This document shows, piece after piece, positions 1,997-39,312 of a stretch of 39,925 bases of DNA; the first letter of the stretch is position 1; every line of letters starts with the position of its first letter. This stretch comes from Octopus bimaculoides. Lineage: Eukaryota. A program made the position numbers and the translations under genes. Under the pieces are notes generated by a model. It did no database searches. It was not told the origin of the DNA and worked only from the letters and a program-made list of their open reading frames with translations. Where the stretch lies: contig NC_068981.1 in the NCBI RefSeq assembly GCF_001194135.2, positions 126,310,676 to 126,350,600 of the forward strand, written 5' to 3'.

Positions 1997-2154
1997 GATT
2001 TCAAATTTTGGCACAGCAACTTCGGGAAGGGTGTAAATCGATTACACCGACCTCAGTGTGCAACTGTTGCTCATTTTATCGATCCCGAAGGGGTGGAAGG
2101 CAAAGTCGACCTCGACGGAATTTGAACTCAGAATGTTACGACGGACGAAATACC
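1997..2154 (-). mobile_element. tRNA-derived SINE family 1, partial
   Basis: Reverse-complement match to the copies at 3015 and 4620. Confidence 0.85.
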
Positions 2155-2260
2155 ACTTTTCTAAGAACAAATATTAACATATTTTATAAACTGTATCTGT
2201 TCAGATTATAATAAAGATGAATTGCACTGAAAATACTGATTAGTAATGAACGATATATAT

Positions 2261-2459
2261 TTCTTTATTGTCCATAGGGGGCTAAACATAGAGGGGGCAA
2301 ACAAGGACAGTCAAAGGGATTAAGTCGATTACATCGACCCCAGTGCGTAACTGGTACTTATTTCATCGACACCGAAAGGATGAAAGGCAAAGTCGACCTC
2401 GGCGGAATTTGAACACAGAAGTTAACGACTGACGAAATACCGCTAAGCATTTCGCCCAG
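2261..2459 (-). mobile_element. tRNA-derived SINE family 1, variant tail
   Basis: gtcgattacatcgaccccagtgcgtaactggtactta..gaaaggatgaaaggcaaagtcgacctcggcggaatttgaac shared with the other copies. Confidence 0.9.
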
Positions 2460-2645
2460 AGTCCGGAGTGACCCACAGTTAAATGAATCTCGTTACTGAA
2501 AAAATCTTACAGCTAAATAATGTATAAAGATCACCATTTTAGAAAAGAACGGAGAAAAAAACAAACAAACAAAAAAAAAGGAAATCAAGAACACGTAGAG
2601 AAGTACGCAAATTATGAATTTTATATAGCTTTATATTACACTATG

Positions 2646-3014: not shown

Positions 3015-3233
3015 AAGGCGACGAACAGGCAGAATCGTTAGCACGCCGGAAAAAATGCTTAGCGGTATTTCGACCGTCTTTACGTTCTGAGTTGAAATTT
3101 CGCTGAGGTCGACTTTGTCTTTCATCCATTCGAAGACGATAAAATATGTACCAGTTGAGCATTGGGGTTGATTTAATCGACGTCGCCCCTCCCAACAAAA
3201 CTGCTGCCCTTGTGCCAAAATTTGAAACCAATA
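3015..3233 (+). mobile_element. tRNA-derived SINE family 1, near full length
   Basis: Pol III A-box-like GGCAGAATCGTTAGC and B-box-like GAGTTGAAATTTC. The central ctttcatcc..cgataaaata.gtaccag block resembles the MetaSINE central domain as I recall it. Confidence 0.9.
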
Positions 3234-3764: not shown

Positions 3765-3885
3765 CCTTATTTTTCAAGGCCGATAAAATAAGTACCAGTG
3801 AAACACTGGGGTCGATATAATCGACTGGTCCCTTCCCCCAAAATTTCCGGCCTTGTGCCTATAGTATAAAGGATTATTATTATTC
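3765..3885 (+). mobile_element. SINE family 1, 3' half with (ATT)n tail
   Basis: cgataaaataagtaccagtgaaacactggggtcgat..ggccttgtgcctatagtataaaggattattatt. Confidence 0.85.
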
Positions 3886-4619: not shown

Positions 4620-4833
4620 AGGCAACGAGCTGGCAGAATTGTTAGCACATCGGACAAAATGCTTAACGGTATTTTGTCCGTCTTCAGGTTCTGAGTTCAA
4701 AATCCACCGAAGTCGACTTTGCCTTTCATCCTTTCAAGGTCGATAAAATAAGTACCAGTTGAGCACTGGGATCGATGTAATCGACTTACCCCGTTCCCCG
4801 AACTTGCTGGCTATGTGCCAAATTTGAAATCAA
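4620..4833 (+). mobile_element. tRNA-derived SINE family 1, full length
   Basis: A box TGGCAGAATTGTTAGC, B box GAGTTCAAAATCC and the conserved central block. Confidence 0.92.
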
Positions 4834-5185: not shown

Positions 5186-5553
5186 ACCACGAAAAGGATC
5201 ATTCATTAATTTGTGTTGAATTTTATTGTTATGTTATGTTATATGAATTTCATGTGTCTGAAGCTCATATAGTCTGGTTGTTTTTGATAGGGAATAAAGA
5301 GGGAGTGCATAGAGAGAACATTTTATAGAAAAGATAAAAGACGTTGTTGTTGAGACTCAAGACTAACCTAATTCAGAAAACTTATTATGACGATATTGTC
5401 TTTTTAGTTGTATAGAAAAGAAGGAAACAGTATAGACAAATATGAAAGTTACGTTATTAACGTGTCTTAAGAGAGTTCTGATCTTAAGAGAGGTTCATGA
5501 CCGTCGTCGTCGTTCTTCTTCTTCTTCTTTGTGGTCGTGGTCGTTGTGGTTAT

Positions 5554-6284
5554 TTAAGAAGTCTCTTCGACAATTTTGTTTAGGTCTTCCACTGTTGCTT
5601 GAATGGTTAACTCTATTCCATATCCCCAGTAGTTAACTCTTTGGGTTCTTGTGGCCTTCAGTATCTTGGCCTCCTCATTCATGTCATACATTATGGCTGT
5701 CATCAGCCATGCTTCTTTCAGCTCTGGGGGCACTCTGCCAACTTGCACCCTAGCCACACGTTTGCCACAGTACGATGGCAAAAGTACCCATTCTTCAGAT
5801 ATTATTGCCTCCGTGGAGTGCTTAATTGCTTCCTCTTCTTAGGAAGCAACAGCGTACTTTCTCCCTCTTGTTATAAGTATGGTTAGACATTTAATATTTT
5901 AAAACTTTTTTCAATAACCTCTATTGTCGCTATTTCTATTGTTCTATCACCGTTTTTTCATTACGTTGGTTGTTAGTTCTACAGGCGGCGTTAATTTCAG
6001 TGTATTTTTGTCTCTTTCCAGTAACTTTTTGCATTCCTTCATATTTCGAGGGTCAACCTTTATTTCTCGTACCTACAGCGTTTCCACATCTAATCCTCTT
6101 CTAGTTACAGCCGCATAACTGTGGCCACCTGCTGGCGTTTTCTCCATTTTTCCACAATGAGGAAAAAACAACAATTCAAAATAACACTAGCAACAATTTG
6201 AACAGTAACAATCAATCAAACAAATATTTGACTTACGTCTAACATGACAAAAAAAAAAAACAACAACTCAAACTGCATGTGACA
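5554..6284 (-). mobile_element. ORF1/Gag-like retroelement copy B: 5' UTR plus N-terminal ORF relic, 3'-truncated
   Basis: ATG at 6147. Reads MEKTPAGGHSYAAVTRRGL..REIK..LKLTPP..TRGRKY..EWVLLPSYCGKRVARVQVGRVPPELKEAWL..YWGYG with stops and frameshifts. Homologous to copy A. Confidence 0.8.
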
Positions 6285-6312
6285 CAAACCTCCGCCAAGG
6301 CAACACCAACGT

Positions 6313-8160
6313 CCCGATTTCTTTTATTTGGCACCAGGCTTCTATAAAGAAGGGACAACACAAAAACAGACAAAATATAACGGAGTACATAAAAACACAT
6401 ATCAAATGAATTATGGATATGTGTATTGCACCATTGTTCTCAGGTTTTTCTTTTTTGGTGTCACTCTCCTTCTCTCCTCACNNNNNNNNNNNNNNNNNNN
6501 NNNNNNNNNNNNNNNNNNNNNNNNNNNNNNNNNNNNNNNNNNNNNNNNNNNNNNNNNNNNNNNNNNNNNNNNNNNNNNNNNNNNNNNNNNNNNNNNNNNN
6601 NNNNNNNNNNNNNNNNNNNNNNNNNNNNNNNNNNNNNNNNNNNNNNNNNNNNNNNNNNNNNNNNNNNNNNNNNNNNNNNNNNNNNNNNNNNNNNNNNNNN
6701 NNNNNNNNNNNNNNNNNNNNNNNNNNNNNNNNNNNNNNNNNNNNNNNNNNNNNNNNNNNNNNNNNNNNNNNNNNNNNNNNNNNNNNNNNTTCTATAAAGA
6801 AGGGACAACACAAAAACAGACAAAATATAACGGAGTACATAAAAACACATATCAAATGAATTATGGATATGTGTATTGCACCATTGTTCTCAGGTTTTTC
6901 TTTTTTGGTGTCACTCTCCTTCTCTCCTCACCAATCCCCTCCTCTGCTGCTGGCATTTCTATCTCTGTCTGTCCCTCATTCTGTGTTGCTATCATCTCTC
7001 TTTATTTTCCTTTATCTTCTATGCTCTTTCTTCCTTGTTAGTTGATGGTCTCTGCGTTCGTTGCTCACTTACTTTTGTTGACCTTTCATTTTTTCTCTTC
7101 TCATTCGTATTCTTTTGTTTTTTACTCTGTGTCTCCTCTCCACTTGGCTTTCTTTTCTTCTTAGGACTTTTTGGTGGTGAGTCTGTATTACTTTTCTTCC
7201 TTTTTACCGCTGTGTACTGGTCTTCCATTTTTTTCCCTCCTCTACAGTTGCACCCTCTTCTTCCTGATATTCCTTCTCCGTCTCCTCCTCTTCGTGTTTC
7301 TGGGGACACTTAGCTTTCATGTGTCCCCTTACTCCACATAGAAAGCATACAGGCGGTCTTCCTTTCACAACAATTCTCAACCTCGTCTCGTCTGGCAGTA
7401 CCAGTTCTTCCGCAATCTTGTGGAGGTTTGGCAAGCTTATATGAACCCATACCTCCAACAGTTCACCTCCATAGTTCTCGTCATTTTCAATATTTGGGTG
7501 TCCTCTTCTGTATTATAGAGGATGGCTGCCACCAGCCACGCCTCATCAATTTCTGGGGGCACTCTACCTATTCTTATTCTGGCCGCACGTTTGCCACAGT
7601 AAGTCGGTAGTAGCGCCCACTCAGCCGATCTCAACGGTACAGTGGAGTACTTTCTCGCTTCTTCCTCACTCACGAAGCACACCTCCACTGTGTCTATGCC
7701 GTACTTCTTTCCTCTGGTGTAGTACGTCGTTGAATCCTTAACCCCTCTCAAACACTCCTCAACCGCCTCCACTGCTACTATTTCAACTTTTTTCGTTGCA
7801 ATATTCAGCGCTCTATATACTATGATTCTTCTCTCTGTTCTTTCTATGACTTCCTTAGGAGGCGTCAACCTCAGTCTGTTTCCCTCCTTTCTTGAAGTCT
7901 GTTTCTTCCAATTTAATTTCTCTAAATTGCAGTATATCTGCTGTTAGACCTTTACCAGTCACCGCAACGTAACTGCCCGCTTGTACTGGTTTACCTTCCA
8001 TAACAATATTATTTACAACTTCACCCATAAATGGGGAAGAAAAACAAAAATTCAGATAACAAAAATCCAACAATTCAGCAGTATAACAGTTTAACAATAA
8101 CAGTACTCATATGGAGCGTACACGAATCAAACTCAACTGACTCAAATACAACACTAACAA
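6313..8160 (-). mobile_element. ORF1-only (Gag-like, CCHC) non-LTR-like retroelement copy A, with 12-bp flanking direct repeat
   Basis: caacaccaacgt occurs at both 6301-6312 and 8161-8172. It has a T/G-rich 5' UTR, an ORF relic, and AATAAA (minus strand, 6328-6323) about 10 nt before the repeat. No RT or endonuclease sequence is present. Confidence 0.8.
6861..8028 (-). pseudogene. Frameshifted ORF1p-like nucleic-acid-binding protein (putative RRM-like region, CX2CX4HX4C knuckle, K/E-rich tail)
   Basis: Joins tracked ORFs 7855-8097, 7437-7868, 7204-7458 and 7019-7309 with a terminal frame ending ..KKKNLRTMVQYTYP*. The knuckle is CFLCGVRGHMKAKC. The RRM-like assignment is inference from L1/Tx1 ORF1 architecture. 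Confidence 0.8.
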
Positions 8161-8501
8161 CAACACCAACGTTCTCTCAACGATTAGCCAGAGATGATTT
8201 TTAAAATGAGAATATCTGAAATAAAGTCGACGGCTCTCACAAACGAGAATAAGAAAAATGAACCCGACCGCGCTCAAAAATTAAGTAAAAAAAAAAAAAA
8301 AACGGAAAAATAATCCCGAATCCTTGTCCGGTATCGGATCGATTCCAAAATATAATCGGTTCGTGCCAGTCACGAGGCCAAACATCCCTGAAAGTTTCAT
8401 CCCAATCCATCCAGTGGTTCTTGAGATATCTTGTCGACGGACAAACAAACAAACAAACACGATTGAAAACAATACCTCCACCTTTGCTAAGGCGGAGGTA
8501 A

Positions 8502-8633
8502 TAATAATAATCCTTTCTACTATTGGCACAAGCTCTGAGATATTTATTTTTAGGGGAGGGGCTAGTCGATTTCATCAACCACAATACGTGATTGGTACTT
8601 ATTTTATCGATCCTGAAAGAATGAAAGACAAAG
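8502..8633 (-). mobile_element. SINE family 1, 3' half
   Basis: (AAT)n tail, then ggcacaag..ggtacttattttatcgatcctgaaagaatgaaag. Confidence 0.8.
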
Positions 8634-8809
8634 AGATACATTTACGTTATACACTTTATAGGGAAATATTTTATTTAAGTAGAGACTGGGATGGAATTTA
8701 GAGGTGTGCTTGGAAAGCTGATTGAATTACTGGCCAAAAACCACAGCCAGTCTACAGTAATACTGACTTTGTCTTGAACTTAAAACATTTCCACATTTTT
8801 ATGCATCTG

Positions 8810-10589: not shown

Positions 10590-10740
10590 CATCAGAAGAT
10601 AGAAATTTTCCCTGTGGTTGACTTTGCCTTTCGTCATATTAAAGTCGATAAAATAAAGTACCAGTCAAGTACTGGGGTCGATGTAATCGACTTAGCCCCA
10701 CTCGTTAAAATTACGACCCTTGTGACAAAATTTTAAGCCA
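10590..10740 (+). mobile_element. SINE family 1, partial
   Basis: gactttgcctttcgtc..gtcgataaaataaagtaccag..ggggtcgatgtaatcgac. Confidence 0.85.
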
Positions 10741-11126: not shown

Positions 11127-11562
11127 CTAATTAAAATATAAAGACATTGTGAATGAATTAGAATATGGAATCACTGTATCTAATCAAAATATAAGGCCGT
11201 TGTGCTTTATCAAAATGTAGAACCATTATACCTAATCAAACCATAGGACGAACGTAGTTGTATAAAACACTGAACCTTTGTGTGTTATCAAATTATGGAA
11301 CCATTCTATTCAACAATTTCTAATATAAGCAGAAGGACTACAATTTTGAAAGGAGAGTATTAGTCGGTTCTACAGCGTCCATTATTTGACTGGTATTTTA
11401 TCGATCTCGAAAGGGAAAGAGGTAAAGTTGATTGCAGCAGGATTTGAACTTAGAACGTATAGTGTTTTTTCAGACACTCTAATGATCCTGCCACATCGCC
11501 ATCCTCCAATTATAATCATCAAAATATTGAATCAATGTGCCTAATCAAAATATAAGCTGTTG
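11127..11562. repeat. Degenerate ~26-bp minisatellite (ctaatcaaaatata.a.cc.ttgtg) split by a SINE
   Basis: About 7 units at 11127-11315 and 2 more at 11515-11562. Confidence 0.6.
11325..11505 (-). mobile_element. SINE family 1, decayed
   Basis: actggtattttatcgatctcgaaaggg..ggatttgaacttagaacg..aatgatcctgcca. Confidence 0.7.
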
Positions 11563-12654: not shown

Positions 12655-12812
12655 TCCATCCACCTTTTCCAACCACAATTCCTGAGGGTCGTCGGGGTAA
12701 TGTCCTCAGGCATCTCCTCAATAAAGTTCTCTCAGAAGCAACCGCCATTACATTTTCCAGATGGATTCCCAAGCGTGACCAACCGAGACAATAGATATTA
12801 TCCAACCATATC
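12655..12812 (-). mobile_element. RTE-clade LINE, 3' terminus
   Basis: Reverse complement aligns with 24890-25050 (tggtcacgct..ggaatcca..gaggag.tgcctgagga); (GGAT)-type tail. Confidence 0.75.
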
Positions 12813-13364
12813 GCTCATAGTCTACTCTTATTTATTTAATGATGATTTTTGTCAAGAAAGGAAAGGATGGTAACTCCCAAAACCAAAATGATATAAAATG
12901 GAGTGGAAACACACAGTGGAAAGTGAGTCTGATGTCTGGCAAGTACGGTAAAAATTCCAGACACGTTTCGGCCTTATTTAAATCAGTCTAACTCGATGAT
13001 TTTTAACCGTTTTATTATCAAGGACTTCTTTTATTTAAATGAATGTTTCAGCGGAGCTCAGGCAGTTGAAAGTTATGTTTAATCAAGAAGCTGGTTTAAG
13101 TAATTAATAACGAACCCGTTTTCTCAGTTCCATCATTCTATTGAAGAAATATGCAATTAAATAAATAGTAGTGTAAAAATAATAAAAATCTAACTTGCTT
13201 AATGAGATAGCTGATACTGCTTTGTTAATACTATGTTTGAATTTCGGGTTCAATGACAAACACTTGTAACGGTTAGTCATTATAAATATGATCTAAATAT
13301 ATTAAACTATTCCTAAAGATTTGGAAATGACTCTAAAGTTTTATTTTTATCAGCCTTATCGTGA

Positions 13365-16160: not shown

Positions 16161-16468
16161 GGTTTCAATTTTTGGCACAGGGCCAGCGGTGTTTGAGGAG
16201 AGCGAGGAGCCTATTATATCGACCCAAGTACTTGACTCGTACTTCTTTTATCGACCCCGTCCCGAAAGGAGGAAAGGCAAAGTCGACTTCAGCATAATTT
16301 GAATTCAGAAGCTAAGGACGGATGACCCAAGTACTTGACTCGTACTTCTTTTATCGACCCCGTCCCCAAAGGAGGAAAGGCAAAGTCGACTTCAGCAGAA
16401 TTTGAATTCAGAAGCTAAGGACGGATGAAATGCTGTTAAGAATTTGGTCCGGTGTGCAAACGATTCTT
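16160..16468 (-). mobile_element. SINE family 1 with an internal 103-bp tandem duplication
   Basis: 16221-16323 is repeated at 16324-16426 with 2 mismatches. Confidence 0.88.
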
Positions 16469-16859
16469 ACATAGGTACAAGGCAAGGAGGCGGGTAGTCA
16501 CTTAAATAAAGCATAGTTCATGACTAATGTTTTCTTTTTATTGAACCCGGAAGGATGTTGATGATGATGATGATGATGATGCGTTATAATGAAGAGGAAA
16601 AGATTATACTGATGAGGTTAGCACTTCGTACGCATTCCCCAATTGTCGAAAGTCCAGTAATAATTATCTCCAGGTTTTGATATCTGGTTAGTCAACCACC
16701 TGCATTTGGGGGTTGTCGGAAATACAGTCTTCACTGTTAAATACTAAACAGATGTTTTCACACGAGATACTCAGTCGGCTATGGTGATTAGTCACTAGAA
16801 GAAAAGGAAGGAAGCAAGCAAGAAAAGAAAACTTAAGTTGAAGCTTAAAAGTGAAGACT

Positions 16860-17185
16860 AAGAAACAAGACAAGAAAAGGAAGAAGAGTAGGAAAAAAAA
16901 ATAATAAGATGAAGAAGAATGAGACTAGGGCAGTGATGAAGACGATGACGGCGACGACGACGATGATGGTGGTGGTGGTGGTGGTGGTGAGGATGAGGAT
17001 GGGGGGGATGAGGAAGGGGAGGATGAGGATGGTGAGGATGATGATGATGGGGATGACGATGAGGATGATGATGACGATGGTGGTGATGACGATGGGATGA
17101 TGATGATGATGATGATGGAATCGTGCACGTCTGCTTGAGGAGAACGAGCGTTTTAACATGTGCAAAGAGGTTATTATTATTATTA

Positions 17186-17217
<32 letters not shown>

Positions 17218-17235
17218 GTTATTATTATTGTTATT

Positions 17236-17273
<38 letters not shown>

Positions 17274-17320
17274 CATTATTATTATTATTATTATTATTAT
17301 TGTTATTATTATTGTTATTA

Positions 17321-17386
<66 letters not shown>

Positions 17387-17414
17387 TTGTTATTATTATT
17401 ATTATTATTATCAT

Positions 17415-17445
<31 letters not shown>

Positions 17446-17545
17446 GGTGATACTGGTGATGGTGATGGTGGTGGTGGTGGTGGTGGTAGTGGTAGTAATG
17501 GCACTAGTAGTAGTAGTAGTAGCAGCAGCAGCAGCAGCAGAAGTG
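16860..17545. repeat. Compound trinucleotide array: GAA-rich, (GAT/GGT)n, (ATT)n, (AGT)n, (GGT)n, (AGC)n
   Basis: Direct inspection; explains the poly-I/L/Y ORFs. Confidence 0.97.
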
Positions 17546-17689
17546 AACGTCTGCTGGTGAGAAAGAAACTTGTGATGTGAAAGTAGGGAGAAAGATAAAC
17601 AGAAAAAGATGTTAATAAAACAATGTTCAAAGAAACAGCAAAATGTTATAGAAGCTAAGTATATAGCTGTACAGGATTCGTATGTACAC

Positions 17690-17909
17690 GTATATGTGTG
17701 TGTCTGTGTTTACTTGTGCGCGCGCGCACGAGTGTGTGTGTGTGTGAGTGTGTGTGTGTGAGTGTGTGTGTGTGTGTGAGTGTGTGCTTGCGCACCTGTA
17801 TATGTGTATATGTATGTATGCAAACACATACACATATGCATGTACTGTATGTATCTATGAGTGTATGTTAAGATACCCGCCTGTCTGTCTGTCTGTCTGT
17901 CTGTCTATT

Positions 17910-17952
<43 letters not shown>

Positions 17953-18168
17953 GTATAAATATATGTATAAATAAAAGACTATATACATGCATTCATATGT
18001 GTATACGACACTACATCCCCCCACACACATATTTATACATACACATGCATACATACATATAGCCATCCATCCATCCATCCATCCATCCATACTTACATAC
18101 ATACATACATACATACACAAACGTATATATATACATATGCAGAGAGAGAAAGAGAGAAAGAGAAAGCG

Positions 18169-19907: not shown

Positions 19908-20125
19908 AATAGTTTCAAATTTTGAAACAAAGAAAGCAATTTCGGGGGAGGGGTAAGTCAATTACATCGACCCCTAGGCTCAACTGGTACTTATTTTATC
20001 AACCTCAAAAAGATGAAAGGCAAAAGTCGGCCTCGGCGGAATTTGAACTCAGAACGAACAGACAGACGAAATGCTGCTAAGAATTTTGCCCGGCGTGCTA
20101 ACGATTTTCCCAGCTTGCCGCGTTC
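19908..20125 (-). mobile_element. SINE family 1, full length
   Basis: Reverse complement has head gcggcaagctgggaaaatcgttagcacgccgggc, B box, central block and (ATT) tail. Confidence 0.9.
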
Positions 20126-21964: not shown

Positions 21965-22310
21965 TAGTTTCGGGTTCATCTCCATTGCACGAAACCTTGG
22001 GCAGTGTCTTCTACGATAGCCCCGGGCCCATTAATGCCTTGTCAGTGAATTAAGCAAAAAAAAAAAAAAAANNNNNNNNNNAAAAAAAAAAAAAAAAAGC
22101 TGTGTATGTATGTATGTATGTATGTATGTATGTATGTATGGGTTTGTCCCCAACCACTTTACTTCCTTGTAACATAGCTGTTTGGCAAAAGAGGCCAATA
22201 AAATAAATATCAAACTTAAAAATAAGTATTGGGGTCGATTTGTTCGACTAAATCTATCAGGACAGTGCCCTAGTATGGCCACAGTCTAATAACTCATAAA
22301 TAATAGAAAA
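21965..22310 (+). mobile_element. SINE family 2 (CORE-like), 5'-truncated
   Basis: accttgggcagtgtcttctacgatagc, poly-A/gap/(TATG)n linker and the family tail. Confidence 0.8.
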
Positions 22311-24104: not shown

Positions 24105-25052
24105 CGTATTCGCGCCAGGCACCAAGCTGTGGCAGGGATGTATATCGTCGCCTCTCCTTTTCATAATCTTTATGAACTGGATTGATATACGCAGCCACTG
24201 TGGAAGTAGTATTACAGTTAGTGGGTGTAGGATCACTCGGCTGATATTTGTAGAGGACATGGAGCTTCTTGACTCATCAGAAGGTGATAACCAGCATGCG
24301 CTAAATGGGTTCGCAGCCGAGTGCGGCAAGATAGGGAAGAGAATTAGTGTTGCGAAGACTGAGACATGGGTCCTCTCAAGAAAGTCTTCCAAATGCAGTT
24401 CGCAAGTTATTGGACCATCACTGAGACAAGTGGAGAAGTTTTAGTATCTCGGAACCTTATTTACGAGTGATGAGAAGCAGGAGGTTAGATAAGATGCTAG
24501 AATTGCAAGTGCTGACACAGTAATACGCCATCTCCAGCATTCGATCCTCAGAAGAGGAGAGGTCGGCAAAAAAGCCGAACTCGCTATTTTTATTGGTGTT
24601 CGTGCTTATCCTCAAATATGGTGATGAATGTTGGGTAATGACCAAAAGAGTACGAGCTCGAATATAAGTACCTGAAATGGGGTTCCTTCGAAAGATCTCT
24701 GGATTAACGTTATTCAACAGGGTGCGTAGTTCAGAAATCAGAGAGTCTACCCCGGTTGAGCCGCTAATTCTCCGCATTGAGCTCTGTACTACGGACATGT
24801 GATTAAAATATCACAGGAAAGAATCGCGTAACGGATTCGTTAAGCCGAGTTAACAGGAAGGAAACCTAGGGGTAGACCAAGATCGAAGTGGTTGTATAAT
24901 ATTCAGAGTCTCACTTGGTCACGCTTAGGAATCCAACTGAAAAGTCTAATGACAGTTGTTTCTGATAGGACCCTATGGAGGAGGTGCCTGAGGATTCTAA
25001 CCCCAACGGTTCTCCTAAGAATAGTGAGCGGAGGAGATTGGATGGGTGGATG
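24105..25052 (+). mobile_element. RTE-clade LINE, RT C-half to 3' end
   Basis: QGCISSPLLFIIFM (QG-x-x-LSPLLF), LIFVEDMELL (FADD), VEKF*YLG, YGDECWVMTKR, EMGFLRKISG and GRKPRGRPRSKWL; ggatgggtggatg tail. Confidence 0.92.
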
Positions 25053-30920: not shown

Positions 30921-31320
30921 TTCTTTTACGCTTTTACTTGTTTCAGTCATTTGACTTCGGCCAAGCTGGAGCACCACCTTTAGTCGAGCAAATCGACCCT
31001 AGAGCTTATTCTTTGTAAGCCTAGTACTTATTCTATCATTCGCTTTTGCCGAACCGCTAAGTTACGGGGAGGTAAACACACTAGCATCAGTTGGCAAGCG
31101 ATGTTGGGGTGGGGGACAAACCAAACACAGAAACACAAACATATATATATATATATACGGCGGGCTTCTTCCAGTTTCCGTCTACCAAATCCACTCACAA
31201 GGCTTTGGTCGGCCCGAGGTTATAGTAGAAGACACTTGGCCAAGGTACCACACAGTGAGACTGAACCCAGGACCATGTGGTTGGTAAGCACGCTACTTAC
31301 CACACGGCCACTCCTGCGCC
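30921..31320 (-). mobile_element. SINE family 2 (CORE-like), full length
   Basis: Reverse complement gives head ggcgcaggagtggccgtgtggtaag, then ggtaccttggccaagtgtcttctactataacc, (TA)n linker and full tail. Confidence 0.9.
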
Positions 31321-38349: not shown

Positions 38350-38535
38350 TCTCTCTCACACACATACACAAACTCACACACACACATACACACACACATG
38401 CATACACACACACGCACGCACACATTCACACATACAAACTCATCTCTCATATTACATACATGTACGCACACACACACATATATGTATATATACATTGTGT
38501 GTTTGTGTGTGTGTGTGTATGTGTGTGTGTGTGTG
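38350..38535. repeat. Imperfect (CA)n then (GT)n microsatellites
   Basis: Direct inspection. Confidence 0.9.
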
Positions 38536-38686
38536 TGACTGTGTGTTAAAAAGCTTACTTCTCAGTTACATGGTTCCACGTTCAGTCGCACTGCATGGTA
38601 CCTTAGGCAAGCGTAATCTTCTATAGCCCCGGGCCGACCAAAGCCTTGTGAGTGGATTTTGTAAACAGAAAGTGAAAGAAGCCCGT

Positions 38687-38749
<63 letters not shown>

Positions 38750-39038: not shown

Positions 39039-39056
39039 NNNNNNNNNNATTCATAA

Positions 39057-39102: not shown

Positions 39103-39312
39103 TTGCTGAAAAGTTTCTGGCTCTGAGTAAGAGAAAATACAGGAGGATCAGTTAATTATGATTTTATTCAACATATTCCCCTCTTAGATTCACGCACTTA
39201 TTACAGAGGTCCTTCAGTTTTTCTAAAGCCTGTAAAAGAATTCGGAAAGTTGGGCCGCCAGCCAGGCCTTTCGCGACACCCTTAAAGCCAGGAACTTTTC
39301 AGCACCTCCTCG
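39096..39312. mobile_element. Mariner-derived MITE, 217 bp
   Basis: About 29-bp TIRs: cgaggggttgctgaaaagtttctggctct / aaagccaggaacttttcagcacctcctcg. 39096-39260 is the reverse complement of the mariner end at about 1005-1173. Confidence 0.9.

What the first reader, a model, noticed from the sequence alone, without database searches (positions are those of the whole stretch)
5554..8501. Two divergent ORF1-only retroelements inserted about 25-30 bp apart at the 3' subterminal repeat of one Helentron: candidate transposon-targeting system
Seen, reading the minus strand: Helentron-like 5' end (8501), then its body, then acgttggtgttg, copy A, acgttggtgttg again, then ccttggcggaggttt (the 3' subterminal IR), and immediately the 5' UTR of copy B. 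Both copies are in the same orientation with intact-looking 5' UTRs, yet share only 37 of 59 residues in their best block (hand count), so they look like independent insertions. Established: Tx1-clade non-LTR elements are sequence-specific and the founding Xenopus Tx1/Tx2 elements insert into other transposons. HAL1 and HeT-A show that ORF1/Gag-only elements exist. Inference: a non-autonomous ORF1-only family that targets this Helentron end, perhaps using it as a safe multi-copy landing site. I do not know of a description of this in cephalopods.
Basis: partly seen in the sequence, partly recalled or inferred. Interest (0 to 1): 0.85.

Follow-up and report, generated by a model that had tools for sequence, protein, structure and literature searches.

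The report
Octopus retroelement pair beside a Helentron remnant
Two decayed "ORF1-only" retroelement copies do sit head to tail at the end of a small Helentron-like transposon in an octopus genome, but related loci suggest these elements pile up next to each other rather than target the Helentron.

Summary
The anatomy is largely confirmed. On the minus strand, a SINE tail is followed by a ~380-bp Helentron-like non-autonomous element (HINE). Copy A is inserted into it with a perfect 12-bp target-site duplication (TSD). The 3' subterminal repeat follows, then copy B. Three uninterrupted HINE relatives carry the 12-mer once, so it is host sequence and a true TSD. The N gap is flanked by an exact 142-bp duplicate and is probably a scaffolding artefact.

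A and B are decayed, divergent members of a large octopod family. Autonomous relatives (ORF1 + APE/RT/zf-RVT, closest solved structure human L1 ORF2p) share the last ~50 nt, ending AATAAAGAAATC. ORF1-only units recur in four other loci.

Helentron targeting is not supported:
- The two other copies of B's subfamily are not next to a HINE.
- The other HINE copies are empty at that site.
- Divergent family members lie head to tail, 0-30 nt apart, in five of nine loci without a HINE. Two of those junctions have their own TSDs at the neighbour's 5' end.

The best reading is an array-forming L1/Tx1-like lineage, with the HINE incidental. Flanks of copy A's own subfamily could not be sampled, so a subfamily-specific preference is not excluded.

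The parts
8500..8640 (-). 5'-truncated octopus SINE ending in an (ATT)4 tail (8511-8500). It lies directly upstream of the HINE 5' end.
   Evidence: Aligns with eight other SINE copies in the window. The same GGATTATTATTATT tail is seen in the copy at 3772-3870.
8161..8499 (-). Helentron-like non-autonomous element (HINE), 5' part. It contains the palindromic 5' subTIR TACCTCCGCCTTAGCAAAGGTGGAGGTA (8500-8473), a core conserved across animals (GGATGGATTGGGATGAAACTTTCAGG), a T-run, and the body up to the first copy of the 12-mer (8172-8161).
   Evidence: 54 metagenome loci share the core; L009, L030 and L048 share the 5' end; 82% identity to octopus relatives H2 and H3.
6313..8160 (-). Copy A, an ORF1-only non-LTR element of ~1.4 kb once the gap artefact is collapsed. 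Features: 5' UTR 8160-8002; ATG 8001; CCHC knuckle 7347-7306; lysine-rich region; short 3' UTR ending AATAAAAGAAATCGGG (6328-6313). It has at least 3 frameshifts or stops and lacks the C-terminal domain of its relatives.
   Evidence: (zf-CCHC E=9e-4). One search shows the 3' ~50 nt align with autonomous LINEs.
6482..6931 (.). Assembly artefact inside copy A: a 308-N gap (6482-6789) plus a 142-bp exact repeat (6790-6931) of 6340-6481.
   Evidence: (family D19).
8161..8172 (-). 5' copy of the target-site duplication ACGTTGGTGTTG.
   Evidence: Present once in the empty HINE relatives.
6301..6312 (-). 3' copy of the target-site duplication ACGTTGGTGTTG.
6282..6300 (-). HINE 3' subTIR CCTTGGCGGAGGT (6300-6288) plus the first bases of the HINE tail, TTGTGT (6287-6282).
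   Evidence: (L023, L025). The tail consensus in relatives is TTTG[T/C][G/A]CTCTCTGAGTG.TCTTGTT.
5560..6281 (-). Copy B, the 5' UTR plus the N-terminal ~60% of an ORF1 from a different subfamily. Features: conserved 5' motif TTTGAGT 6272-6266; ATG 6147. It has in-frame stops and internal deletions, and is 3'-truncated at about 5560. The 5' boundary is uncertain within 6281-6247.
   Evidence: (closest P0098 at 78% and P0011).
5490..5545 (-). Trinucleotide microsatellite (ACC/ACG/AAG/GAC runs) that replaces the missing 3' part of copy B.
   Evidence: No further ORF1 or HINE-tail sequence lies downstream.

Best explanation
The region is a nest of four transposable elements in an octopus genome. 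A small Helentron-type non-autonomous element (HINE) lies after a SINE tail.

Copy B is an old, now truncated ORF1-only derivative of an octopod L1/Tx1-like LINE lineage. It abuts the HINE's 3' end. Whether B landed in the HINE tail or the HINE landed in B's T-rich leader is unresolved.

Copy A is a second ORF1-only element from a different subfamily. It later inserted by target-primed reverse transcription, about 20-50 bp upstream of B's 5' end. That position happens to lie inside the HINE, so 12 bp of HINE sequence were duplicated.

Both copies are non-autonomous. They encode only a Gag-like, CCHC-knuckle ORF1 protein. They are presumably copied in trans by autonomous relatives (ORF1 + APE-RT-zfRVT ORF2, ~5.3 kb) that recognise the shared, non-poly(A) 3' end (..GTGGGTAATAAAGAAATC).

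The close, same-strand spacing reflects a habit of the whole lineage. New copies, even of very divergent subfamilies, insert within about 0-30 nt of the 5' end of a resident copy. This builds head-to-tail arrays. The Helentron is incidental.

Shown: the anatomy, the TSD, the empty sites, the ORF1-only structure, the shared 3' end, the autonomous relatives and the recurrent arrays.

Inferred: trans-mobilisation, the order B before A, and homing to the neighbour's 5' end.
For: TSD and empty sites.

Family size and host: 381 representative clusters at E<=1e-3, all those named coming from Octopus bimaculoides, O. sinensis or O. vulgaris.

ORF1-only units ending in the conserved terminus: A; C1 in L055; the L056 copy; L058 #1; L061.

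Autonomous units: L058, L059, L060 and L063 have Exo_endo_phos, RVT_1 and zf-RVT. The RT's best solved relative is human L1 ORF2p at 9e-40, against R2 at 3e-24. The 3' ~50 nt align between ORF1-only and full-length elements.

Arrays:
- L058 has five same-strand units that are 57-86% identical in nucleotides (42-93% in ORF1 amino acids), so they are separate insertions.
- L058 #1 is flanked by an exact 16-nt repeat, GGATGTGATATAATGA, found only at 2479 and 4186. The 3' copy touches #2's 5' UTR.
- L058 #2 is flanked by ATAGACA(A)CTG just before #3.
- L055 C1->C2 are 12-22 nt apart.
- L059 has three units.
- L061 has three ORF1-only units.

Copies of B's subfamily that are not at a HINE: C2 and D.

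Precedent for tandem TEs arising by repeated insertion with a TSD in the junction: PMC5932611.
Against: - Only nine octopod loci (about 190 kb) could be read. They were reached through annotated or called proteins, so the sampling is small and possibly biased.
- No second copy of A's own subfamily was available with flanks, so a subfamily-specific preference for the HINE site remains possible. Tx1-clade families are known to differ in target and to target DNA transposons (PMC4494074).
- The three TSD-bounded cases show no common nick-site sequence and variable distances to the neighbour's 5' end, so no recognition mechanism can be named.
- Some junctions without TSDs (L059, L058 #3/#4/#5) could come from template jumping or unequal exchange instead.
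- B's 3' junction is lost, so how B arrived cannot be reconstructed.
Confidence: 0.6

Rival explanations
1. One or both ORF1-only subfamilies are Tx1-like, sequence-specific elements whose endonuclease recognises the 3' subterminal region of this HINE family. A and B would then be two independent hits on the same multi-copy 'safe' target, with adjacent target sites (ACGTTGGTGTTG | CCTTGGCGGAGGT..).
For: - Both copies lie within about 30 bp at the same HINE end and on the same strand.
- The lineage is L1/Tx1-like.
- Tx1-clade families that target DNA transposons, and tandem insertions sandwiching a TSD, are documented (PMC4494074).
- A's own subfamily could not be sampled elsewhere.
Against: - C2 (L055) and D (L057), of B's subfamily, have no HINE sequence upstream. 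Their flanks score no better than shuffles against HINE 3' ends.
- H1, H2 and H3 are empty at the 12-mer site.
- A and B use different positions, unlike strict site-specific elements.
- Arrays in L055, L058, L059 and L061 form without a HINE.
Confidence: 0.15
2. Chance juxtaposition in a repeat-dense region. A, B, the HINE and the SINE simply accumulated at one spot with no targeting of any kind.
For: - The window is rich in SINEs, microsatellites and other repeats.
- HINEs prefer T-rich sites, and B's leader is T-rich (PMC4067079).
Against: - Apart from A and B, the 40-kb window holds no other family copy. At densities of about one copy per 20-40 kb, a same-strand neighbour within about 30 bp is expected in fewer than 1 in 1000 copies.
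- Yet such a neighbour is seen in 5 of 9 loci.
Confidence: 0.08
3. One event rather than two. A and B would arise from a tandem duplication, or from reverse-transcriptase template jumping that copied two RNAs into one insertion.
For: - End-to-end arrays with 0-5 nt spacers exist in L059 and L058.
- Near-identical units in L059 could come from unequal exchange.
Against: - A alone is bracketed by a perfect 12-bp duplication of host sequence, and 13+ bp of HINE separate it from B.
- A and B are only about 38% identical in protein.
Confidence: 0.03

Closest known systems
HAL1 ('half-L1') elements of mammals: ORF1-only, non-autonomous L1 derivatives
   Same: These elements have a 5' UTR, an ORF1 and a 3' end shared with an autonomous LINE, but no ORF2. 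This is seen in A, C1, the L056 copy, L058 #1 and L061. Mobilisation in trans is presumed.
   Different: - The ORF1 has a CCHC knuckle and an extra C-terminal domain rather than the coiled-coil/RRM/CTD type.
- The 3' end is a conserved ~50-nt sequence ending AATAAAGAAATC, with no poly(A) tail.
- The family is octopod-specific and very diversified (381 clusters at 50% identity).
Tx1-clade target-specific LINEs (Tx1L in the piggyBac-type Tx1D; Tx1-Mar and SINEU-3 in Mariner-N4_AMi; PMC4494074)
   Same: - The autonomous relatives have APE + RT + zf-RVT in ORF2 and a CCHC-type ORF1.
- One copy sits inside a DNA transposon, with a TSD between the tandem copies.
   Different: - No fixed target sequence was found.
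- Other copies are not in the HINE.
- Clade membership (Tx1 versus L1 proper) was not tested phylogenetically.
Tandem TE dimers formed by double insertion (Drosophila R1, hobo, P and many non-LTR elements; McGurk & Barbash 2018, PMC5932611)
   Same: Head-to-tail copies arise from separate insertions, with a target duplication lying in the junction.
   Different: - Here the partners are very divergent subfamilies.
- The junction duplications differ from array to array.
- Arrays reach at least five units at internal chromosomal sites.
Self-clustering LINEs: Zepp and ZeppL (L1-clade) nested clusters in green algae (PMC3446292); HeT-A/TART/TAHRE telomeric head-to-tail arrays
   Same: These are LINE lineages whose new copies accumulate next to or within resident copies, in one orientation.
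   Different: - The octopus arrays are not terminal (for example at 71 of 110 Mb).
- Individual units have TSDs, so these are internal insertions rather than end additions.
- One cluster per chromosome has not been shown.
Helentron non-autonomous elements (HINE/DINE-1; Thomas et al. 2014, PMC4067079)
   Same: The host has a palindromic subTIR about 2 nt from a T-flanked 5' end, a complementary 3' subTIR, a short hairpin and a T-rich 3' terminus in relatives, and an internal T-run or microsatellite.
   Different: - The tail after the 3' subTIR is about 28-35 nt in octopus relatives, against the 38-60 nt reported.
- No Rep/Hel/APE partner was examined.
- The window copy's tail is disrupted.

Membership tests
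Helentron non-autonomous element (HINE), for the host | 12-15 bp, often palindromic subTIR 2-4 nt from the 5' terminus, with its complement near the 3' end | tested here: met
   TACCTCCGCC..GGTGGAGGTA at 8500-8473, directly after T's. The 3' CCTTGGCGGAGGT at 6300-6288 is the complement of ACCTCCGCCAAGG. The same ends occur in H1, H2 and H3 and in distant animal relatives. Definition taken from PMC4067079.
Helentron non-autonomous element (HINE), for the host | Short hairpin and T-rich terminus downstream of the 3' subTIR | tested here: inconclusive
   Present in H2 (CACTC-TCT-GAGTG..TTGTTATT), in H3, and in L023 (GCGCTC..GAGTGC TTTTCTAG). In the window copy only TTGTGT is clearly retained before copy B.
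Helentron non-autonomous element (HINE), for the host | Insertion into TT or T-rich DNA without a TSD; an autonomous Rep/helicase/endonuclease partner | not tested
   The 5' flanks end in ..ATT or ..TTATT in all four octopus copies. No empty site for the HINE itself and no Rep/Hel gene were looked for.
Non-LTR (TPRT) retrotransposon, for copy A | Variable-length TSD, no terminal repeats, and a 3' end shared with an RT-encoding LINE | tested here: met
   A has a 12-bp TSD that is single-copy in empty paralogues. L058 #1 has a 15-16-bp TSD. The 3' ~50 nt align with full-length APE/RT elements.
L1/Tx1 superfamily | ORF2 with an N-terminal APE, an RT and a C-terminal zinc-binding domain; RT closest to L1-type | tested here: met
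   In autonomous relatives: PF03372 at 3.6e-15, PF00078 at 2.3e-31, PF13966 at 2e-8. Human L1 ORF2p scores 9e-40, against R2 at 3e-24. The window copies themselves have no ORF2.
Tx1 clade specifically | Phylogenetic placement of the RT with Tx1, Keno, Kibi and relatives | not testable with these tools
Type I ORF1p (RRM + CCHC) | An RRM fold followed by CCHC knuckle(s) | tested here: inconclusive
   The CCHC is present (PF00098 at 8.7e-4 in A and 1.6e-4 in P0018). The N-terminal domain has no Pfam or PDB sequence match. The AlphaFold model had pLDDT 39 and was unusable.
Target-specific LINE (criterion of PMC4494074: the same sequence in >20% of a family's flanks) | This HINE end recurring in the flanks of other copies | tested here: not met
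   In B's subfamily, 1 of 3 5' flanks is HINE (B yes; C2 and D no). There are none in the L056, L058, L059 or L061 junctions. For A's subfamily n=1, so it is not testable.
ORF1-only (HAL1-like) non-autonomous LINE | An ORF1 stop followed by a short 3' UTR and the family's 3' terminus, with no RT between them | tested here: met
   Seen in A, L056 10582->10843, L058 #1 4056->4186 and L061. L055 C1 also fits, but a 333-N gap lies upstream of its stop.

The most novel reading that the evidence does not exclude
An octopod L1/Tx1-like LINE lineage, together with its ORF1-only riders, homes to the 5' ends of resident relatives. Integration would occur with ordinary TSDs within about 0-30 nt of a neighbour's 5' terminus, whatever the local sequence. 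Arrays of mixed subfamilies would then grow upstream at internal chromosomal sites. This implies tethering to something at the resident copy's promoter or 5' UTR rather than endonuclease sequence specificity.
Probability: 0.35. Interest if true: 0.6.

Novelty: new member of a known kind. Interest (0 to 1): 0.38.

Why it matters
As first proposed (a retroelement family using a Helentron end as a landing pad), this would have been a cephalopod counterpart of Tx1L/Tx1D. The evidence does not support that.

Three things remain useful:
- It gives a first description of a large, octopod-specific ORF1-only family with a defined, non-poly(A) 3' recognition end, together with its autonomous partner type.
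- It indicates that this lineage builds head-to-tail arrays of divergent members. If the 5'-end homing holds genome-wide, it would be a tractable case of LINE self-targeting. It would also be a route from dispersed TEs to tandem arrays in a genome famous for repeat expansion.
- It shows that the HINE core is conserved across distant animals.

Tried and rejected
- Translating the HINE and searching for protein homologues found nothing.
- A viral-contig DNA scan for the HINE core found nothing.
- Structure prediction of the ORF1 N-terminal domain gave pLDDT 39, so no fold search was run.
- A PDB sequence search with ORF1 found only CCHC knuckles.
- The second and third word-indexed protein searches added little. 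Four exact-protein look-ups failed or gave no junction.
- I considered that the 40 nt after the subTIR might be pure HINE tail rather than B's leader. Similarity of A's first 45 nt to it is at chance level, but the TTTGAGT motif is shared with C2 and D. The HINE tail also contains TGAGT. This is left unresolved within 6281-6247.
- I considered that the L055 spacer TTGAGCGGCAG and the L057 flank TTGAGCCGACAGG might be degenerate subTIRs, or that the family's 5' end derives from the HINE tail. Both were rejected because local alignment scores equal the shuffle means.
- I looked for the missing HINE tail downstream of copy B and found nothing above chance.
- A literature search for the subTIR sequence returned only primer coincidences.
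Full report
**1. What is in the window**

Read on the minus strand, the region contains the following, in order:
- a 5'-truncated SINE that ends in (ATT)4 at 8511-8500; the SINE was identified by alignment with eight other copies in the window;
- ACCTCCGCC at 8499, inside the self-palindrome TACCTCCGCCTTAGCAAAGGTGGAGGTA (8500-8473);
- about 330 bp of non-coding body;
- ACGTTGGTGTTG (8172-8161);
- copy A (8160-6313);
- ACGTTGGTGTTG again (6312-6301);
- CCTTGGCGGAGGT (6300-6288);
- copy B, down to about 5560, followed by a trinucleotide microsatellite.

The 12-mer occurs exactly twice in 39.9 kb. The subTIR motif occurs once.

**2. The gap**

The N run at 6482-6789 is bracketed by an exact 142-bp duplicate: 6340-6481 equals 6790-6931. 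This is the signature of two contig ends that overlap but were joined with an estimated gap. Removing 450 bp makes copy A continuous at ~1.4 kb.

A real 450-bp tandem duplication cannot be strictly excluded. It would not change the order of parts or the TSD.

**3. The host is a Helentron-type non-autonomous element, and the 12-mer belongs to it**

The conserved core GGAYGGATTNNGATGAAAYTTTCAGG retrieved 54 contigs from animal-containing metagenomes.
- Some show the same 5' end: T-run + ACCTCCGCCAAGGAGGTAATGTTTTC (L009, L030, L048).
- Some show the same 3' end: GCTTGGCGGAGGTCTGCGCTCTCCGAGTGCTTTTCTAGTT (L023); GCCTTGGCGGAGGTTTGCGC (L025).
- That 3' end is a subTIR followed by a hairpin and a CTAG-type terminus.

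These features match the published definition of HINEs/Helentrons (PMC4067079).

Three uninterrupted octopus relatives were found in fetched genome loci: H1 and H2 in L057 (O. bimaculoides) and H3 in L060 (O. sinensis). They align end to end with the window host once copy A is removed (80% mean column identity). They read ..GAGAGAAC[A/G]TTGGTG[T/C]TG CCTTGGC[A/G]GAGG.. with a single 12-mer region.

ACGTTGGTGTTG is host sequence duplicated on insertion of copy A, not the retroelement's own terminus.

**4. What copies A and B are**

Copy A carries:
- a 160-nt 5' UTR;
- an ORF broken by at least three frameshifts or stops;
- a CCHC knuckle (PF00098, E=9e-4);
- a lysine-rich stretch;
- a short 3' UTR ending AATAAAAGAAATCGGG, with no poly(A).

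Its closest relatives are Octopus bimaculoides proteins at 73-80% identity. Several of these continue with a further ~75-residue C-terminal domain that A lacks.

Copy B has a 5' UTR and roughly the first 60% of the ORF. It has in-frame stops and internal deletions, and no 3' end. A and B are 38% identical in protein overall, and 40 of 65 in the best block.

A profile search of 1.84 billion representative proteins gave 381 hits at E<=1e-3. Every named hit comes from O. bimaculoides, O. sinensis or O. vulgaris, and many more come from unnamed sequencing-run assemblies.

**5. ORF1-only structure and autonomous partners**

Genome loci fetched around family proteins show complete units. Each consists of a 5' UTR, ORF1, a 130-330-nt 3' UTR and a conserved terminus, with no ORF2:
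- L055 C1 (..GTGCCTAATAAAGAAAACG);
- L056 (..TAACAAAGAAATCG);
- L058 #1 (..GGGTAATAAAGAAATAG);
- three units in L061.

Full-length relatives of ~5.3 kb occur in L058, L059, L060 and L063.
- Their ORF1 is homologous to A and B.
- Their ORF2 has Exo_endo_phos, RVT_1 and zf-RVT.
- The RT's best solved relative is human L1 ORF2p (9e-40), ahead of R2 (3e-24).
- The last ~50 nt (TTGT..TGTCCC.TCT..GGCCCCTTGTGGGTAATAAAGAAATC) align between ORF1-only and full-length elements.

Whether the lineage is Tx1 or L1 proper could not be tested.

**6. Is the Helentron end a target?**

The available evidence says no.
- The two other copies of B's subfamily are not beside a HINE. C2 (L055) follows another retroelement copy, and D (L057) follows unrelated DNA.
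- Apparent resemblances of those flanks to the subTIR score no better than dinucleotide shuffles.
- H1, H2 and H3 are unoccupied at the 12-mer site. H3 has an unrelated ~650-bp insertion elsewhere.
- A and B use different positions, unlike strict site-specific LINEs.
- By the working criterion used for Tx1 families (the same sequence in >20% of flanks; PMC4494074), B's subfamily scores 1 of 3. The wider family scores 0 of the other junctions read.
- No second copy of A's own subfamily was retrievable with flanks. This is the main gap in the test.

**7. A better explanation for the adjacency**

Head-to-tail contact between family members recurs without any HINE.
- L058 has five same-strand units, one ORF1-only and four full-length. 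They are only 57-86% identical in nucleotides, so they are separate insertions of different subfamilies.
- Unit #1 of L058 is bracketed by an exact 16-nt repeat, GGATGTGATATAATGA, present only at 2479 and 4186. The downstream copy touches unit #2's 5' UTR.
- Unit #2 is bracketed by ATAGACA(A)CTG just ahead of unit #3.
- L055 has C1's 3' end 12-22 nt before C2's 5' end.
- L059 has three units with 0-5-nt spacers.
- L061 has three ORF1-only units of different subfamilies.

Altogether, five of nine octopod loci show copies 0-30 nt apart on the same strand. The other copies seen are few, about one per 20-40 kb. On that density, chance predicts such a neighbour for fewer than 1 in 1000 copies.

Copy A fits this pattern. 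It is a TSD-bounded insertion about 20-50 bp upstream of the 5' end of an older, more decayed relative.

Tandem TEs produced by repeated insertion, with a TSD in the junction, are documented in Drosophila (PMC5932611). LINE self-clustering is known for Zepp (PMC3446292). The kind of phenomenon is therefore known. What attracts new copies to a neighbour's 5' end here is not, because the three TSDs share no motif.

**8. What stays open**

- B's exact 5' boundary lies somewhere in 6281-6247. Both the HINE tail and the retroelement leader contain T(T/C)TGAGT.
- It is unclear whether B entered the HINE tail or the HINE entered B's T-rich leader. No tail remnant lies downstream of B.
- It is unclear whether A's subfamily has a preference of its own.
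- The sample is small, and it was reached through called proteins, so it may be biased.

**9. Verdict**

The 'transposon-targeting system' part is not supported.

The finding is best filed as a new member of known kinds: a HAL1-like ORF1-only LINE derivative, and a tandem double insertion. It carries a moderately interesting lead, namely array formation by homing to resident 5' ends.

Noticed in passing
L055:8474-10397 (O. bimaculoides CM046615.1): This is a circularly permuted retroelement. The 3' half (starting at ..IMYNMKEV) runs through to the 3' end, then a 12-22-nt spacer, then the 5' UTR and 5' half, which stops at ..EAWLMTA. That is exactly where the first piece begins. The flanks are unrelated on both sides. 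It looks like one unit length cut out of a tandem array or a circle and reinserted.
   Followed up: partly
L057:2733-3448: Two copies of the host HINE family lie tail to tail, with their 3' tails overlapping within about 50 bp. H1 lacks the 3' hairpin that H2 and H3 have.
   Followed up: partly
L001-L054 (metagenome contigs): The 26-nt HINE core GGAYGGATTNNGATGAAAYTTTCAGG, and in some contigs the same subTIRs, occur in 54 contigs from invertebrate- or fish-associated metagenomes. The element core is therefore conserved across distant animals.
   Followed up: partly
window 2020-2460, 3016-3215, 3772-3870, 4620-4820, 8500-8640, 10638-10725, 11395-11458, 16192-16470, 19940-20125: There are at least nine copies or fragments of one octopus SINE, on both strands, several ending in ATT-type tails. 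One abuts the HINE 5' end. In L056 a 5'-truncated copy abuts a retroelement's 3' end.
   Followed up: partly
window 16915-17500: A long GAT/GGT/GAC trinucleotide-rich stretch has strong GC skew (0.53 over 17001-18000). It may be a coding-like low-complexity repeat or a microsatellite array.
   Followed up: no
window 22072-22081 and 39039-39048: Two 10-N gaps. The first is flanked by a 16-bp exact end overlap, and the second has its right flank repeated 58 bp to the left. These look like small scaffolding artefacts of the same kind as the one at 6482-6789.
   Followed up: partly
window 31129-31311 / 38535-38717; 1032-1164 / 39105-39237; 12694-12830 / 24867-25003: Long inverted-repeat pairs of 133-183 nt, 76-87% complementary, lie kilobases apart. 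They are presumably copies of further, unidentified repeat families in opposite orientation.
   Followed up: no
L060:17173-17820: The O. sinensis HINE copy H3 carries an unrelated ~650-bp insertion at about position 150 of the element. This differs from the site used by copy A.
   Followed up: no
L062:2380-2560: Downstream of a family-like ORF1 fragment there is a Ty3/gypsy-type RT motif (..YLDDILIKS..) in a sequencing-run contig. The relation between the two was not examined.
   Followed up: no
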